Positions 977 through 47,725 of a stretch of DNA of 64,000 bases are shown piece after piece. The stretch's first letter is position 1; the number at the start of each line of letters is the position of its first letter. The stretch covers positions 174,938 to 238,937 of IMG/VR virus record IMGVR_UViG_3300030099_004448; one strand, written 5' to 3'. A model generated the notes under the pieces. The model was not told where the DNA came from. It worked only from the letters and a program-made list of their open reading frames with translations, and did no database searches. Position numbers and translations under genes: made by a program.

Positions 977-1287
977 CACACCCACATCACGAACATAATA
1001 CACTTTCTGCAATTCGTGGATTTCTTGAGAATATTGCTAACGAAGAGTTGACAGATGTTCCAGAAAAGATTAGAATGAGTGCAAGATATTTTTTGAAAAC
1101 CTATCCATCTCAGGAAAGGTTGAACGAACTATATCAGGGTCAAACTTTTACTGATCTTGCTGCTCCTGCAGAACCAGAGAAGGCGATTCCCAACCCAAAT
1201 AGGATTGTGAATGATAACCAAACTTGGGAAACACCAGGATTCAAGTGGAAGAGTGAAGTAGAGTTTAAACCCTCTCAGGGGAATTAG
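973..1287 (+). CDS. hypothetical protein
   Basis: 104-aa ORF; stop codon lies inside tRNA-Ala. Confidence 0.7.
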   Translation: MTHPHHEHNTLSAIRGFLENIANEELTDVPEKIRMSARYFLKTYPSQERLNELYQGQTFTDLAAPAEPEKAIPNPNRIVNDNQTWETPGFKWKSEVEFKPSQGN

Positions 1288-1350
1288 CTCAGCTGGTAGA
1301 GCGCCTGCTTTGCAAGCAGGATGTCAGCGGTTCGAGTCCGCTATTCTCCA
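1278..1350 (+). tRNA. tRNA-Ala (TGC)
   Basis: Cloverleaf GGGGAAT/ATTCTCC acceptor, GCTC/GAGC D stem, CCTGC-TTTGCAA-GCAGG anticodon arm, AGCGG-TTCGAGT-CCGCT T arm. Confidence 0.97.
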
Positions 1351-18094: not shown

Positions 18095-18358
18095 ATGGGT
18101 AGCGTGAAAGTATTAATTGAAAACTGCGATGCAACCGCAGCTGAAGATAGGGGGTTGCCGAGTAACTCATACTTGGTAACATACCTAGATGAAGAACAAA
18201 ACAAAAAACAAGATATTACTCAGGGTGGACAAGTAGACATCTTTGATTATTATTACGACAAGTATAAGAATCTCCAAGCCTTGGATTGGACAAATGGTAC
18301 AGTGAATCCTAAACTGTACGGATACAAACCAGCCGAAGAAAAAAAGAAAAAAAGATGA
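18095..18358 (+). CDS. hypothetical protein
   Basis: GAGG RBS; IFDYYYDKY motif. Confidence 0.72.
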   Translation: MGSVKVLIENCDATAAEDRGLPSNSYLVTYLDEEQNKKQDITQGGQVDIFDYYYDKYKNLQALDWTNGTVNPKLYGYKPAEEKKKKR

Positions 18359-18573
18359 GTGAAGGATTTAAGGGTTTTACTGATAAGGAGGATCAAGAGT
18401 TAAAACTCAATATCCGTACTAGTGAAATCGACAAAATTATCAAACAGTATAAAAAACTGAAGAAGTATCAAAAGTCTTCCATACACGAAATCGCCAAACT
18501 CAGTAATAAACAAACTCAAATTGAAAAACTGGTGAACGAATACGGTATTGATCCAGAGGCGTTACAAGACTAA
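18355..18573 (+). CDS. hypothetical protein
   Basis: 72 aa; ATGA coupling. Confidence 0.7.
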   Translation: MSEGFKGFTDKEDQELKLNIRTSEIDKIIKQYKKLKKYQKSSIHEIAKLSNKQTQIEKLVNEYGIDPEALQD

Positions 18574-18578
18574 AAACT

Positions 18579-18592
18579 GTATCGTCTTATAC
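18579..18592. promoter_or_regulatory. NtcA-like binding site
   Basis: (T)GTA-TCGTCTTA-TAC matches GTA-N8-TAC, 8 nt upstream of the -35 box. Confidence 0.5.
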
Positions 18593-18600
18593 CAAATGGG

Positions 18601-18629
18601 TTGACTATATAGAATATAGGAGTTATAAT
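18601..18629 (+). promoter_or_regulatory. near-consensus sigma70-type promoter
   Basis: TTGACT-17 nt-TATAAT. Confidence 0.8.
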
Positions 18630-18638
18630 ACTCCAGTA

Positions 18639-18870
18639 CGTTCATCCCACTTTCGGGTGGGACGCAAGTAAGTCGCGGAACGGAGCGTTCATCCCATGTT
18701 AGAACTACTTTTTTATTCTAGTATGACCTGCACTGATGCTGATGCATTAATGCTCAAAATCAAGGCACAACAACATCTTGAACCTAGAATTCAGATCGAA
18801 CTGGTCGAGACCATAAAGGAATCTGTACCACAGTGTGATTTCTACTGGGACGCAAACGACTAAAGGAACG
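18639..18870 (+). ncRNA. tandem glutamine riboswitch-like RNA (glnA/Downstream-peptide family)
   Basis: Two copies of CGTTCATCCCA...TGGGACGCAA...GGAACGG; begins about 10 nt after -10 box; precedes YRG-motif peptide. Confidence 0.75.
18696..18863 (+). CDS. 55-aa ORF nested in riboswitch P2 (MLELLFYSSMTC...CDFYWDAND), not in ORF track
   Basis: GGAG upstream; open frame ATG 18696 to TAA 18861-18863. Confidence 0.65.
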   Translation: MLELLFYSSMTCTDADALMLKIKAQQHLEPRIQIELVETIKESVPQCDFYWDAND

Positions 18871-18903
18871 GGCCTTAAAATCCAATTACTTTAGGAAACG
18901 ACA

Positions 18904-19071
18904 ATGAACACACTAAATCTCATCAAAAAGCAAATCGAGAAAGCAGCTGCTCTCCATAATGCACAGATTACTCATACCTCATATCGTGGTGTTGAGTATG
19001 ATACACGTTGTGTAGAGTCCAAGGAGTCTCACGGCACCTTCTGTTATCGTGGTCACACTTATAAGAAGTGA
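18904..19071 (+). CDS. DUF4278-like YRG-repeat peptide (55 aa), not in ORF track
   Basis: SYRGVEY and CYRGHTY motifs; AGGA RBS. Confidence 0.75.
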   Translation: MNTLNLIKKQIEKAAALHNAQITHTSYRGVEYDTRCVESKESHGTFCYRGHTYKK

Positions 19072-19078
19072 GGCAATT

Positions 19079-19174
19079 ATGCAAGCAATTCAAGTAGCAT
19101 CATTAGGCTCTATTTTAAGCATTGCATTTCTTGGTTTACTTTATGGGGAACTCACACTTTTATATAAGAGGTGA
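19079..19174 (+). CDS. 31-aa hydrophobic peptide, not in ORF track
   Basis: GAGG RBS; MQAIQVASLGSILSIAFLGLLYGELTLLYKR. Confidence 0.6.
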   Translation: MQAIQVASLGSILSIAFLGLLYGELTLLYKR

Positions 19175-19177
19175 GAT

Positions 19178-19342
19178 ATGTTGAAGATCAGTTTACATTA
19201 TGATCTTCCAACATATGACCCCCAAAAACACGATCCAGATGAAACATTCGCGTTTTTGACGTATCGTGGAGTACATTATGCTAAGAGGGTTAATTTAAAA
19301 TCCCTTAGCATTCCAAGTTGGAAAGTATTCAAGAGAGGGTAA
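19178..19342 (+). CDS. second YRG-motif peptide (54 aa), not in ORF track
   Basis: GAGGTG RBS; LTYRGVHY motif. Confidence 0.65.
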   Translation: MLKISLHYDLPTYDPQKHDPDETFAFLTYRGVHYAKRVNLKSLSIPSWKVFKRG

Positions 19343-19360
19343 AGAACCCTCTCTTTTTTT
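19331..19360 (+). terminator. intrinsic terminator
   Basis: AAGAGAGGGT-AAAGA-ACCCTCTCTT followed by T tract. Confidence 0.85.
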
Positions 19361-19506
19361 GTATTTTTGTATCAAAGACAACAAACTTAGTAAATTTGTG
19401 TGTAAACCGTAACATTTTTGCTATATAATGATAGAATTAAGGATGGAGAGATGAACTGAAATTTATTCTTTTCGCTATGGTATAAAAACTAAATTGGAGG
19501 TGGAAA

Positions 19507-19764: not shown

Positions 19765-19923
19765 ATGCAAAAAGAAAAACTAAAATTAATCGTCCGAAAT
19801 CTTAAGTCACTGGTTGACCTCTTGGAGTCTGAAGTCTATTCCGATCCAGACGCTTATGTGGTAAAATCAAAGACAAACACCTATACAACTAGTGACAACG
19901 ATGACGACGGATACCCAGACTAA
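19765..19923 (+). CDS. small hypothetical protein (52 aa), not in ORF track
   Basis: MQKEKLKLIVRNLKSLVDLLESEVYSD...DDDGYPD; late promoter at 19743. Confidence 0.7.
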   Translation: MQKEKLKLIVRNLKSLVDLLESEVYSDPDAYVVKSKTNTYTTSDNDDDGYPD

Positions 19924-19930
19924 AGATTCT

Positions 19931-20593
19931 ATGACAAACCAAATCAAACTTATCGCCCTAACTCAAGGTGCAGGTGAACTTCTTGAGAAAACGGCGCAGG
20001 AAGTTATTTCGTATGTCGCTCGTGTGAGCAATCCAAACAATCAATTAAACTTTGATACTTCTGCAGGTCTCCTCAAGTATTGTATCAAACACGAACACTG
20101 GTCGATCTTTGAACAGGCCTATATGACTCTGGAGATCAATACGACCAGAGCTATCGCGGCTCAAATTTTGCGCCATCGCTCATTTACATATCAAGAGTTT
20201 TCCCAGCGTTATGCTGCGTCTACTTCTCTTGACCCAATCAAGATGCCCGAGTTCCGTCGTCAAGATACTAAGAATCGTCAGAACAGTATTGATGATATGG
20301 ACGAATTTGAGATTCAAAGACTGCAACTGCAGACACAAACTCTATTCGACTCCGCAACTGCACTGTATCAACAGATGTTAGATCGTGGCGTTGCAAAGGA
20401 GTGTGCTCGAAATATTTTGCCCTTGGCCACGCCAACAAGAATTTACATGACGGGATCATGCCGTTCATGGATTCATTATATCAATCTGAGATCTGCTAAC
20501 GGTACGCAGAAAGAACACATGCAGATTGCAGAGGGATGTCGTGAGATTTTTGTCGAACAATTCCCAGAGATTGCAGCTGCTTTAGAGTGGTAA
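19931..20593 (+). CDS. thyX: FAD-dependent thymidylate synthase
   Basis: H.SIFE, RAIAAQILRHRSFTYQEFSQRY (RHRx7S), KECAR..LP, Q.EH. Confidence 0.95.
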   Translation: MTNQIKLIALTQGAGELLEKTAQEVISYVARVSNPNNQLNFDTSAGLLKYCIKHEHWSIFEQAYMTLEINTTRAIAAQILRHRSFTYQEFSQRYAASTSLDPIKMPEFRRQDTKNRQNSIDDMDEFEIQRLQLQTQTLFDSATALYQQMLDRGVAKECARNILPLATPTRIYMTGSCRSWIHYINLRSANGTQKEHMQIAEGCREIFVEQFPEIAAALEW

Positions 20594-46834: not shown

Positions 46835-47016
46835 GACCAGAAACACGAAAGTCAATGGAAATGCTTTGGTCTGCAAAGTGGAATCTTCCCACAGCAGCAA
46901 AACATGCAAATCTGACCAACAAAGAGATGAAAATTACTTTCAATGAGTATTGTTCATTTCATCCTCCGACCTGGAATATTAAATTAGATGACGAGGGACT
47001 GTCGCCTATTGGTTAA
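46831..47016 (+). CDS. cyanophage hypothetical protein
   Basis: MRPETR.SME.L..AKWNLP.AA; stop lies inside tRNA-Ile. Confidence 0.72.
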   Translation: MRPETRKSMEMLWSAKWNLPTAAKHANLTNKEMKITFNEYCSFHPPTWNIKLDDEGLSPIG

Positions 47017-47066
47017 GGCCTGCTCCTTATAAGGGCATGAATCGGGTTCAATTCCCGACAGACCCA
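46995..47066 (+). tRNA. tRNA-Ile (TAT)
   Basis: GGGACTG/CAGACCC acceptor (one A-A mismatch), TGCTC-CTTATAA-GGGCA anticodon arm, TCGGG-TTCAATT-CCCGA T arm. Confidence 0.82.
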
Positions 47067-47070
47067 CCTT

Positions 47071-47155
47071 GCGAGTATGGCGGAATCGGTAGACGCACCA
47101 GACTTAAAATCTGTTGACCACTAAGGTCGTGGGAGTTCAAGTCTCCCTACTCGCA
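47071..47155 (+). tRNA. tRNA-Leu (TAA)
   Basis: GCGAGTA/TACTCGC acceptor, CTTAAAA loop, long variable arm, GGGAG-TTCAAGT-CTCCC. Confidence 0.95.
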
Positions 47156-47652: not shown

Positions 47653-47725
47653 GCCCTTGTAGCTCAGCTGGTAGAGCACCGCTTTTGTAAAGCGGTTGTC
47701 GCAAGTTCAAGTCTTGTCGGGGGCT
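47653..47725 (+). tRNA. tRNA-Thr (TGT)
   Basis: GCCCTTG/CGGGGGC acceptor, CCGCT-TTTGTAA-AGCGG anticodon arm. Confidence 0.95.

What the first reader, a model, noticed from the sequence alone, without database searches (positions are those of the whole stretch)
18579..19360. Nitrogen-sensing micro-operon: NtcA-like box, consensus promoter, riboswitch and four peptides closed by a terminator
Seen: perfect GTA-N8-TAC (18579-92) just upstream of TTGACT-17-TATAAT. It is followed by ORFs of 55, 55, 31 and 54 aa, two with YRG motifs, and a strong terminator. All four are missed by the ORF track. The box is centred near -50, not the canonical -41.5 activator position. Established: NtcA reads 2-oxoglutarate status. 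Host glutamine synthetase inactivators are controlled by both NtcA and a glutamine riboswitch, and DUF4278 peptides have been proposed to play a related role. Inference: the phage senses host N status at two levels and uses peptides to tune glutamine synthetase or other N flux.
Basis: partly seen in the sequence, partly recalled or inferred. Interest (0 to 1): 0.6.

Follow-up and report, generated by a model that had tools for sequence, protein, structure and literature searches.

The report
Phage glutamine riboswitch enclosing a gene
A marine cyanophage carries its host's style of nitrogen-sensing switch (an NtcA-type DNA site plus a double glutamine-binding RNA) in front of four small protein genes, and one of those genes sits inside the RNA sensor itself.

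Summary
That covers the TGTA-N8-TAC box, a near-consensus sigma-70 promoter, a glutamine aptamer, four short ORFs under purifying selection, and a terminator.

The RNA is more elaborate than "a riboswitch". It consists of two glutamine-aptamer units. Unit A runs 18639-18683. Unit B has its 5' half at 18686-18696 and its 3' half at 18846-18872. ORF1 (55 aa) fills the hairpin loop of unit B. Its AUG lies in the 5' arm, and its last five codons and stop codon are aptamer sequence.

Covariation across 120-260 distinct loci supports three helices: the helix that closes ORF1, a helix between the two units (AGUCG/CGACU), and a competing helix (CUAAAG/CUUUAG) next to the ribosome site of ORF2. ORF2 is a DUF4278-like peptide.

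The most likely mechanism is that glutamine stabilises the aptamer fold, which frees ORF2's ribosome site. The same fold may also bury ORF1's start codon.

The NtcA-like box is conserved at about -50.5, with a fixed 8-bp gap to the -35 hexamer. Whether it activates or represses is unknown. A glutamine synthetase target is weakly supported, because DUF4278 is not the GS-binding part of IF17.

The module belongs to a known kind. The gene-in-aptamer architecture appears to be new.

The parts
18578..18593 (+). NtcA-type box, TGTA-N8-TACC (perfect GTA-N8-TAC at 18579-18592). Centre at about -50.5; 8 bp upstream of the -35 hexamer.
   Evidence: A perfect box is present in 189/272 distinct related loci, at the same place in 170, with an 8-bp gap to -35 in 122. 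Consensus TGTATCA..TACAAA.
18601..18629 (+). Sigma-70-type promoter: TTGACT, 17-bp spacer, TATAAT. Predicted start near 18636.
   Evidence: 11/12 match. TTGAC is present in 145/204 distinct relatives and exact TATAAT in 125/204. The start site is inferred, not mapped.
18619..18634 (+). Inverted repeat GGAGT/ACTCC bracketing the -10 hexamer. It covaries in relatives; its function is unexplained.
   Evidence: stem of 6 or more pairs in 164/204 distinct loci against 46/204 shuffled; 82 distinct arm sequences. Also flagged.
18639..18683 (+). Aptamer unit A. CGUUC 18639-43; hairpin 18645-50/18657-62; CGCAAGUA 18663-70; AGUCG 18671-75 (5' strand of the inter-unit helix P3); GGAACGG 18677-83.
   Evidence: Rfam sub-threshold matches. 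The hairpin covaries. P3 covaries.
18686..18696 (+). Aptamer unit B, 5' half. CGUUC 18686-90; UCCCA 18692-96 (5' arm of the helix that closes ORF1; A18696 is the A of the ORF1 AUG).
18696..18863 (+). ORF1, 55 aa (phrog_504, function unknown), nested in the hairpin loop of unit B. Its last five codons (W-D-A-N-D) and stop codon are aptamer sequence.
   Evidence: dN/dS 0.22. Paralogous to the ORF nested in unit A of other phages (hhalign probability 94%).
18846..18872 (+). Aptamer unit B, 3' half. UGGGA 18846-50; CGCAAA 18851-56; CGACU 18857-61 (3' strand of P3); AAAG; GAACG 18866-70.
   Evidence: Invariant at the nucleotide level in about 120 loci, including where ORF1 stops earlier. Compensatory changes shown. 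RNAalifold pairs the last GAACG with the first CGUUC.
18860..18894 (+). Alternative (anti-SD) hairpin: CUAAAG 18860-65 with CUUUAG 18889-94. The 5' arm holds the ORF1 stop codon and overlaps P3 by two bases. The 3' arm runs into the ORF2 ribosome site AGGAA 18893-97.
   Evidence: a 6/6 complement in 116/121 loci against 12/121 in shuffled loops; G-C 60, A-U 34, G.U 26, A.C 0 at the stop-codon base. Present in the unconstrained MFE fold.
18904..19071 (+). ORF2, 55 aa, DUF4278-like (IF17 N-terminal type) with two YRG motifs; phrog_545.
   Evidence: Pfam 24.4 bits against cut-off 25.3. 31/33 diverse homologues hit PF14105 at E<=0.01. dN/dS 0.17. The first ORF after the element has a YRG motif in 249/252 loci.
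19079..19174 (+). ORF3, 31 aa, a hydrophobic (single transmembrane-like) peptide. It starts 7 nt after the ORF2 stop and has its own GAGG ribosome site.
   Evidence: dN/dS 0.29. No family match.
19178..19342 (+). ORF4, 54 aa, one YRG motif, distantly DUF4278-like; phrog_6192. It starts 3 nt after the ORF3 stop.
   Evidence: hhalign to the ORF2 family gives probability 91% over the YRG core. dN/dS 0.11.
19331..19368 (+). Intrinsic terminator: 10-bp stem, 5-nt loop holding the ORF4 stop codon, then a T run.
   Evidence: RNA-library contigs in three of the four runs laid stop at about 19343 (weak evidence).

Best explanation
This is a phage-borne nitrogen-status operon modelled on the host's IF17-like genes. 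It runs from about 18636 to about 19360 as one short transcript.

Transcription. A strong sigma-70 promoter drives the operon. A conserved NtcA-type site sits immediately upstream of the -35 hexamer. I infer that NtcA bound to 2-oxoglutarate modulates this promoter, more likely dampening it under nitrogen stress, as happens at host gifA/gifB and PMM1846.

Leader RNA. The leader is a double glutamine aptamer. In the fold best supported by covariation:
- The first CGUUC (18639) pairs with the last GAACG (18866), closing an outer glnA-type three-way junction.
- The middle GAACG (18678) and CGUUC (18686) form a short hairpin that closes an inner, circularly permuted unit.
- Both units share one helix, AGUCG 18671-75 with CGACU 18857-61.
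- ORF1 occupies the hairpin loop of the inner unit. Its AUG is in the 5' arm and its stop codon in the shared helix.

Switch. Without glutamine, the segment CUAAAG (which holds the ORF1 stop) pairs instead with CUUUAG next to ORF2's ribosome site, so ORF2 is poorly translated. Glutamine stabilises the aptamer fold, takes CUAAAG away and frees the ribosome site, switching ORF2 on. ORF3 and ORF4 follow by close coupling (7-nt and 3-nt gaps). The same fold would bury ORF1's start codon, and ribosomes on ORF1 would unfold the sensor, so ORF1 and the sensor are mutually exclusive.

Shown here: the features, their conservation and covariation, and coding selection on the four ORFs.

Inferred: ligand binding, the direction of both controls, the single transcript, and any protein target.
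For: Features and coordinates.

The cassette is shared by 420 cyanomyovirus records.

Unit B:
- Its 3' half is invariant at synonymous sites, and it persists where ORF1 ends earlier.
- The helix closing ORF1 shows compensatory changes: U-A 116 / C-G 5; C-G 92 / U-A 14 / A-U 2 / U.G 6. Paired fraction is 0.82 against 0.26-0.62 when the register is slid.

Inter-unit helix: covaries in 263 distinct loci (pair 1: G-C 221, U-A 32, A-U 8). None of 2000 partner shuffles reached the observed pairing.

Independent predictions of the fold:
- RNAalifold predicts the outer closing helix, the inner hairpin and both covarying stem-loops.
- Rfam RF01739 passes its cut-off (41-46 bits against 35) only when the whole double unit of compact relatives is read as one aptamer with an insertion in P3.

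Anti-SD helix: covaries, with the ORF1 stop codon base never opposite a C when it is A. It is in the MFE fold of 18636-18910 (-65.6 kcal/mol). The enforced aptamer fold is 5.4 kcal/mol higher, a gap a ligand could plausibly bridge.

Natural variants carry a tetraloop in place of ORF1. All four combinations of compact and ORF-holding units occur.

Published work: both glutamine riboswitch types act as ON switches of DUF4278 genes, and an RBS-occluding alternative helix was proposed (PMC6212724, PMC6698751).

Box conservation and fixed phasing. ORFs under purifying selection. ORF2 is DUF4278-like.

RNA-library contigs tile 18657-19323, with none in the flanks in three of four runs.
Against: - No experiment here shows glutamine binding, NtcA binding, the start site or the transcript.
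- The window's own aptamer matches are below both Rfam cut-offs.
- The CGUUC/GAACG strands never vary. Covariation therefore cannot decide between the intertwined fold and two separate pseudoknotted units. Unit A alone looks like a Glutamine-II aptamer, and single-unit variants exist.
- A terminating ribosome on ORF1 would itself open the anti-SD helix, so ORF2 might be coupled to ORF1 rather than opposed to it.
- The box position (-50.5, beside a full -35) matches no established NtcA geometry. 31% of relatives lack a perfect box.
- The metatranscriptome boundaries coincide with the limits of sequence conservation, so they are weak evidence.
- DUF4278 is not the GS-binding part of IF17 (PMC6316151).
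Confidence: 0.6

Rival explanations
1. There are two independent tandem glutamine aptamers of the pseudoknotted (Glutamine-II) kind, acting pseudo-cooperatively as described for glutamine doublets. Unit A controls ORF1 and unit B controls ORF2. There is no functional inter-unit fold, and ORF1 merely happens to lie between the halves of unit B.
For: - Unit A alone matches RF01704 end to end (28.7 bits, E 7e-5).
- 157 glutamine doublets are on record as pseudo-cooperative systems (PMC9481103).
- Single-unit variants exist.
- A hairpin with GGAACGG in its loop (CUAAAG/CUUUAG) is the P2 of the Glutamine-II consensus, and it covaries.
Against: - The inter-unit helix AGUCG/CGACU covaries strongly.
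- The units are only 1-4 nt apart, which leaves no room for a separate expression platform.
- RNAalifold and RF01739 both prefer the fold that closes the first CGUUC with the last GAACG.
- Neither unit has a P3 of its own.
Confidence: 0.2
2. NtcA activates this promoter, so the operon is a nitrogen-stress-induced phage function. This follows the proposal that cyanophages exploit the host NtcA response. The riboswitch then restricts translation to the moment glutamine recovers.
For: - Cyanomyovirus genomes carry 1-16 predicted NtcA sites read as promoters (PMC3037559).
- The box lies upstream of the core promoter, about one helical turn beyond the class II position, at a fixed phase.
Against: - The core promoter is already near consensus (11/12) and has a full -35, unlike NtcA-activated promoters (PMC6212724).
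- In 24 relatives the box lies over the -10 hexamer or the start site, which is the repressor position.
- The host counterparts gifA, gifB and PMM1846 are repressed by NtcA (PMC7760959, PMC6212724).
- An activator would work against an ON riboswitch.
Confidence: 0.3
3. The peptides do not act on glutamine synthetase. The DUF4278-like ORF2 and ORF4, the Cys-helix-Cys ORF1 and the membrane peptide ORF3 act on another host target (for example PII-type signalling, transport or translation), or they serve the phage itself.
For: - DUF4278 corresponds to the N-terminal moiety of IF17, which is dispensable for GS inactivation. IF-mediated GS control was judged absent in marine picocyanobacteria (PMC6316151).
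- ORF2 is 55 aa, with nothing C-terminal to the DUF4278-like stretch.
- No solved relative and no named cluster were found.
Against: - The regulatory logic is copied from GS-inactivating-factor genes.
- Co-evolved GS/peptide pairs have not been excluded (PMC6212724, PMC6316151).
Confidence: 0.55
4. The GTA-N8-TAC palindrome is not a protein site. It is either a chance match or an RNA/DNA hairpin belonging to the end of the upstream gene.
For: - Within the window the motif count equals chance (13 against 12.3).
- The motif is palindromic, and a second copy at 19261 is only a by-product of the YRG codons.
Against: - The half-sites are conserved while the N8 varies.
- The extended TGTA..TACA consensus, the fixed 8-bp phasing to the -35 hexamer and the 69% occupancy against 0.05 expected fit a CRP-family site.
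- The stem would be only 4 bp and has no T run.
Confidence: 0.08

Closest known systems
Prochlorococcus MED4 PMM1846 / Yfr6 and other picocyanobacterial IF17-like genes (NtcA site + Glutamine-II riboswitch + DUF4278 peptide)
   Same: - A short DUF4278-type peptide sits behind a glutamine aptamer, with a perfect NtcA consensus at the promoter.
- The riboswitch raises expression under nitrogen excess (PMC6212724, PMC6316151).
   Different: - The host box overlaps the start site. Here it is centred at about -50.5, beside a full -35/-10 promoter.
- The host has one aptamer. Here there are two joined units with a gene inside one of them, followed by three more peptides and carried by a phage.
Synechocystis gifB (IF17) leader: glutamine-I (glnA, RF01739) riboswitch with NtcA repression
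   Same: - The conserved CGUUCA / ACGxAAGUA / GAAGGAACG blocks and the three-way junction are shared.
- It is an ON switch thought to act by releasing an RBS-occluding helix (PMC6212724).
   Different: - IF17 has an IF7-like C-terminal GS-binding part that ORF2 lacks.
- The phage P3 is not a hairpin; it is a helix shared with a second aptamer unit.
- The window scores below the family cut-off.
Tandem glutamine riboswitch doublets (Weinberg 2010, PMC2864571; Sherlock 2022, PMC9481103)
   Same: Two glutamine aptamers lie head to tail in one leader. The compact phage relatives are probably among the 157 doublets counted.
   Different: - Doublets are described as separate riboswitches with separate expression platforms.
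- Here the units are 1-4 nt apart, share a covarying helix and have one platform, and either hairpin loop can hold a 50-70-codon gene.
- In the papers I could read I found no description of that.
Two-piece glutamine-II riboswitch made in vitro (PMC6698751)
   Same: It shows the aptamer tolerates opening of a hairpin loop, and that glutamine drives association of the parts. A 165-nt loop requires exactly this.
   Different: That is an engineered bimolecular construct, not a natural gene-containing loop.
Predicted NtcA sites of T4-like cyanophages (PMC3037559)
   Same: GTA-N8-TAC sites occur in intergenic regions of cyanomyoviruses and are proposed to tie phage genes to host 2-oxoglutarate status.
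   Different: That work read them as promoters and did not link any of them to the glutamine riboswitch cassette. Here the site sits at a fixed, non-canonical position beside a consensus promoter.

Membership tests
Glutamine-I riboswitch (glnA RNA, RF01739) | Score at or above the Rfam gathering cut-off (35 bits) | tested here: not met
   Window 18637-18686 scores 26.3 bits, and the gathering scan finds nothing. Compact relatives pass at 41-46 bits when both units are read as one aptamer. In the window the 190-nt insertion cannot be scored.
Glutamine-I riboswitch (glnA RNA, RF01739) | Conserved blocks CGUUCA, ACG(G/C)AAGUA and GAAGGAACG, arranged as a P1-P2-P3 three-way junction | tested here: met
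   The blocks lie at 18639-44, 18662-70 and 18862-70 (AAAGGAACG in the window). P2 and P3 covary. P1 is predicted by RNAalifold but is invariant.
Glutamine-I / -II riboswitch | Selective binding of L-glutamine with a change in expression | not testable with these tools
   Needs in-line probing or ITC and reporter assays.
Glutamine-II riboswitch (Downstream-peptide, RF01704) | Score at or above the cut-off (33 bits); P1 hairpin, pseudoknot CGUUC/GGAACG, and a P2 hairpin with GGAACGG in its loop next to the start codon | tested here: inconclusive
   Unit A scores 28.7 bits, E 7e-5, full model length. For unit B the P2-like hairpin CUAAAG/CUUUAG covaries. The pseudoknot strands are invariant, so that pairing cannot be told apart from the intertwined fold.
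NtcA binding site | Palindrome GTA-N8-TAC (extended form TGTA-N8-TACA) | tested here: met
   18578-18593. Conserved consensus TGTATCA..TACAAA in 170 loci.
NtcA binding site | Binding by NtcA, enhanced by 2-oxoglutarate | not testable with these tools
   EMSA or footprinting is required.
NtcA-activated (class II) promoter | Box centred at -41.5 replacing the -35 hexamer, with a -10 of the form TAN3T about 22 nt downstream | tested here: not met
   The centre is at about -50.5, with a full TTGACT -35 hexamer 8 bp downstream of the box.
NtcA-repressed promoter (gifA/gifB/PMM1846 type) | Box overlapping the -35/-10 core or the start site | tested here: not met
   In the window the box ends 8 bp upstream of the -35 hexamer. 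In 24 relatives it lies 15-23 nt before the aptamer, over the -10 hexamer or the start site.
DUF4278 (PF14105) / IF17-like peptide | Score at or above the Pfam gathering cut-off (25.3 bits) | tested here: not met
   ORF2 scores 24.4 bits (E 3.9e-5) and ORF4 15.4 bits. 31/33 ORF2 homologues match at E<=0.01, and it is the only family matched. For ORF4, 2/19 homologues match. ORF2 is most likely a divergent relative; ORF4 is more distant.
GS inactivating factor (IF7/IF17) | IF7-like C-terminal region with the arginines that contact GS | tested here: not met
   ORF2 is 55 aa and the DUF4278-like stretch reaches residue 54. In IF17 the GS-binding part lies C-terminal to the 82-residue DUF4278 moiety (PMC6316151).
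Tandem (doublet) glutamine riboswitch | Two glutamine aptamers in one leader | tested here: met
   Units at 18639-18683 and at 18686-18696 plus 18846-18872.
Intrinsic terminator | G+C-rich stem-loop followed by a U run at the end of the last gene | tested here: met
   19331-19355 plus a T run. Termination itself was not measured.

The most novel reading that the evidence does not exclude
The element is a two-output glutamine riboswitch with a protein gene built into the sensor.

- The glutamine-bound, intertwined double aptamer hides the ORF1 start codon inside a helix and releases the ORF2 ribosome site.
- At low glutamine, ribosomes translate ORF1 and in doing so keep the sensor unfolded.
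- A single RNA would then toggle between two different peptides (the Cys-helix-Cys family and the DUF4278 family) according to host nitrogen status.
- The same trick is repeated with a paralogous gene in the other hairpin in many phages.
Probability: 0.3. Interest if true: 0.8.

Novelty: new variant of a known kind. Interest (0 to 1): 0.62.

Why it matters
Glutamine riboswitches and NtcA sites in cyanophages are known separately. Here they are shown to form one conserved cassette in front of IF17-like peptides, so these abundant ocean viruses appear to read both host nitrogen signals (2-oxoglutarate and glutamine).

The structural result goes further. A riboswitch aptamer whose hairpin loop is a translated gene, with the start and stop codons inside aptamer helices, would couple ligand sensing and translation in both directions. 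This is a natural counterpart of the engineered split glutamine-II aptamer.

It also offers a way into the unknown function of DUF4278 peptides, which are present in many copies in Prochlorococcus and Synechococcus. It gives a concrete, small (about 270 nt) RNA for biochemical tests.

Tried and rejected
- Rfam at gathering thresholds over the whole window found only tRNAs. The aptamer appears only in the permissive scan.
- A single-sequence fold of 18630-18700 was no better than shuffles (z = -0.1). Stability of the short piece alone says nothing.
- My first reading of a 3-bp CGC/GCG hairpin in unit A was dropped in favour of the covarying inter-unit helix.
None had the full unit. Nothing can therefore be said about hosts.
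- Late-promoter idea: CTAAATA is not enriched in the window (10 against 11.9 expected), and the window has CTATATA at that place. It is kept only as an idea for the -10 hairpin.
- No solved structure is related to ORF2. The ESM Atlas gave only unnamed clusters for ORF1 and a weak DUF4278 link for ORF2.
- Ames & Breaker 2011 (PMC3127080) is not held. I could not check whether its tandem examples already show the shared helix.
- Complex prediction of ORF2 with GS was not run. DUF4278 is not the GS-binding part of IF17, so the claim is not one I make.
- The metatranscriptome contigs fit the predicted transcript limits, but those limits are also the limits of sequence conservation. I treat them as weak support only.
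Full report
**What the window is.** The window is the last 64 kb of a complete 238,937-bp virus record. It is a T4-like cyanomyovirus. The region 18637-19360 has relatives in 420 Synechococcus and Prochlorococcus phage records, the closest being S-SCSM2R.

**Checking the observation.**
- TGTA-N8-TACC at 18578-93.
- TTGACT, 17-bp spacer, TATAAT at 18601-29, matching 11 of 12 positions.
- An aptamer-like stretch at 18636-89.
- ORFs of 55, 55, 31 and 54 aa.
- A 10-bp terminator stem at 19331-55 with a T run.

Rfam sees the aptamer only in the permissive mode, below both family cut-offs (RF01704 28.7/33 bits, E 7e-5; RF01739 26.3/35 bits). The box is not significant within the window (13 sites against 12.3 expected), so its standing depends on comparison with relatives.

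**The four ORFs are genes.**
- All four are conserved and under purifying selection (dN/dS 0.22, 0.17, 0.29 and 0.11).
- Relatives annotate them as hypothetical proteins. ORF1, ORF2 and ORF4 are phrog_504, phrog_545 and phrog_6192.
- ORF2 is DUF4278-like: 24.4 bits against a cut-off of 25.3, and 31 of 33 diverse homologues match only that family.
- ORF4 shares the YRG core with ORF2 (hhalign probability 91%) but barely touches the Pfam model.
- ORF3 is a hydrophobic 31-mer.
- ORF1 has no family outside phages.
- ORF2, ORF3 and ORF4 are separated by 7 and 3 nt and have their own GAGG sites.

**The box and promoter are conserved as a unit.** I collected distinct loci from GenBank phages and IMG/VR.
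- A perfect GTA-N8-TAC lies within 120 nt upstream of the element in 189 of 272 loci, against 0.05 expected per 150 nt.
- In 170 loci it starts 50-63 nt before the first CGTTCA, and in 122 it ends exactly 8 bp before the -35 hexamer.
- The half-sites and flanks (TGTATCA..TACAAA) are conserved while the centre varies. That is the pattern of a CRP-family site, and the consensus is NtcA's.
- With a start 7 nt after the -10 hexamer, the centre is at -50.5.
- In a minority of 24 loci the box is 15-23 nt before the aptamer, over the -10 hexamer or the start site. That is where NtcA represses host gifB and, by prediction, PMM1846 (PMC6212724).

Neither the activator geometry (-41.5 with no -35 hexamer) nor the usual repressor geometry is met in the window. 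I lean towards dampening under nitrogen stress, by analogy with the host genes and because an ON riboswitch fits that logic. This is inference only.

**The RNA is a double aptamer with a gene inside.**
- The motif CGUUCAUCCCA occurs twice: at 18639 and again at 18686, where it runs into the ORF1 AUG.
- Across about 120 distinct loci, ORF1 begins in that motif and ends in an invariant RNA block, UGGGACGCA(A/C)ACGACU(G/A)AAGGAACGG. This is the 3' half of a glutamine aptamer.
- The block is invariant at synonymous positions, and it stays in place when ORF1 stops earlier. The constraint is therefore on the RNA, not the protein.
- The helix that closes ORF1 (UCCCA 18692-96 with UGGGA 18846-50) shows compensatory changes: U-A/C-G at the first pair and C-G/U-A/A-U at the fourth. 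Paired fraction is 0.82 against 0.26-0.62 for slid registers.
- In other phages a paralogous ORF of about 66 aa (hhalign probability 94% to ORF1) fills the hairpin of the first unit in the same way. Its AUG pairs with the CAU in front of its stop codon.
- Many phages, and one RNA-library contig that maps onto this window, carry a plain tetraloop where ORF1 would be.
- Among 254 distinct loci, 93 are compact/compact, 93 compact/ORF1 (the window's type), 23 ORF0/compact and 39 ORF0/ORF1. The first gene after the element has a YRG motif in 249 of 252.

**How the two units fold.** Three independent lines favour an intertwined fold.
1. RF01739 passes its cut-off on compact relatives only by reading the first CGUUCA, the first hairpin, CGCAAGUA, then a 38-nt insertion in P3, then GAAGGAACG of the second unit.
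2. RNAalifold on 55 compact loci pairs the first CGUUC with the last GAACG, pairs the middle GAACG with the middle CGUUC as a short hairpin, and finds both covarying stem-loops.
3. The P3 candidate, AGUCG of unit A with CGACU of unit B (18671-75/18857-61), covaries in 263 distinct loci. Pair 1 is G-C 221, U-A 32, A-U 8. Pair 5 is A-U 201, C-G 47. None of 2000 partner shuffles reached the observed pairing.

Neither unit has a P3 of its own; each supplies one strand. The inner unit is thus a circular permutation set into P3 of the outer one. Because the CGUUC and GAACG strands never vary, the rival fold of two self-contained pseudoknotted units cannot be excluded. Unit A on its own does resemble a Glutamine-II aptamer.

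**The expression platform.**
- CU(A/G)AAG, which contains the ORF1 stop codon and overlaps P3 by two bases, is perfectly complementary to CUU(U/C)AG immediately before the ORF2 ribosome site in 116 of 121 loci (12 of 121 in shuffled loops).
- The stop-codon base covaries with its partner: G-C 60, A-U 34, G.U 26, A.C 0.
- In the window this is 18860-65 with 18889-94, followed by AGGAA and the AUG at 18904.
- ViennaRNA puts this helix in the unconstrained MFE fold of 18636-18910 (-65.6 kcal/mol). The enforced aptamer fold is 5.4 kcal/mol higher.
- This is the arrangement expected of an ON switch. Both glutamine riboswitch types were shown to raise expression of DUF4278 genes after an ammonium upshift, and an RBS-occluding alternative helix was proposed (PMC6212724, PMC6698751).
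- What ORF1 does to this is open. The aptamer fold would bury its AUG. Ribosomes on ORF1 must unfold the sensor, and on terminating they would also open the anti-SD helix.

**Transcript.** Contigs from four marine RNA libraries tile 18657-19323. In three of the four, none lies on 18320-18639 or beyond 19343. This fits a start near 18636 and the terminator. However, those limits are also the limits of sequence conservation, and contigs cannot show ends, so I count it as weak support.

**What the peptides do.** The GS-tuning idea rests on analogy. DUF4278 is the N-terminal moiety of IF17, dispensable for GS inactivation, and IF-type control has been considered absent from marine picocyanobacteria, although co-evolved pairs are not excluded (PMC6316151). 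ORF2 has nothing C-terminal to that stretch. I put GS as the target at roughly one in four.

**Comparison with what is known.**
- Known: glutamine riboswitches in cyanophage genomes (PMC9964418, PMC9602691), tandem glutamine doublets (PMC2864571, PMC9481103), predicted NtcA sites in cyanomyoviruses (PMC3037559), and the host module of NtcA site, riboswitch and DUF4278 gene (PMC6212724).
- Not found in anything I could read: the shared inter-unit helix, genes occupying the aptamer hairpin loops with start and stop codons inside aptamer helices, and the fixed -50.5 box beside a consensus promoter. The 2011 paper by Ames and Breaker was not available.

**Left unexplained.** A covarying inverted repeat brackets the -10 hexamer (18619-34). 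It has a stem of at least 6 pairs in 164 of 204 loci against 46 of 204 shuffled, with 82 different arms, and it is kept even where TATAAT is lost.

**Verdict.** The element is a new variant of a known kind.

Noticed in passing
window 18619-18634 and the same place in relatives: A covarying inverted repeat brackets the -10 hexamer (window GGAGT/ACTCC). It has 82 different arm sequences in 204 loci and is kept even where TATAAT is lost. It would lie upstream of the predicted start site, so it may belong to a second, longer transcript or act at the DNA level.
   Followed up: partly
L001, L002, L006, L008, L009, L012 and about 60 IMG/VR loci (e.g. L152, L172, L174): A conserved ORF of about 66 aa (the 'gp196-like' ORF, a paralogue of ORF1) is nested in the hairpin of the first aptamer unit. 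Its AUG pairs with the CAU that precedes its stop codon. All four combinations of compact and gene-holding units occur.
   Followed up: yes
window 19261-19274: A second perfect GTA-N8-TAC lies inside ORF4. It is simply the codons for T-Y-R-G-V-H, so it is most likely a by-product of the YRG motif rather than a regulatory site.
   Followed up: partly
relatives such as L001, L004, L021, L144, L156 (loop of the anti-SD hairpin): In one class of loci the loop between GGAACGG and the ORF2 ribosome site is 46-54 nt instead of 21-29 nt and holds an extra conserved hairpin (AACGGAUCC, a stem, then GAGAAGGUU). The window has the short form.
   Followed up: no
L074, L111, L129: Single-unit variants exist: unit A is followed directly by a different short ORF, with no second unit.
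   Followed up: no
35 loci of the CGACN/N'GCCG class (e.g. L253, L261, L302): An A opposite C is kept at the middle position of the inter-unit helix. This may be a specific non-canonical pair.
   Followed up: no
window 1278-1350, 46995-47066, 47071-47155, 47653-47725: Four tRNA genes, as is usual for T4-like cyanophages.
   Followed up: no
window 19892-20593; L134 1021-1116: A ThyX-type thymidylate synthase ORF follows the operon, as it does in several relatives. One related contig carries a PhotoRC-II RNA (57 bits).
   Followed up: no
window 18355-18573: The upstream 72-aa ORF (phrog_21512) ends 5 nt before the box. In relatives the gene in this position varies (glutaredoxin, nrdB-adjacent ORFs, HNH endonuclease), so the cassette moves as a unit that begins at the box and promoter.
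   Followed up: partly
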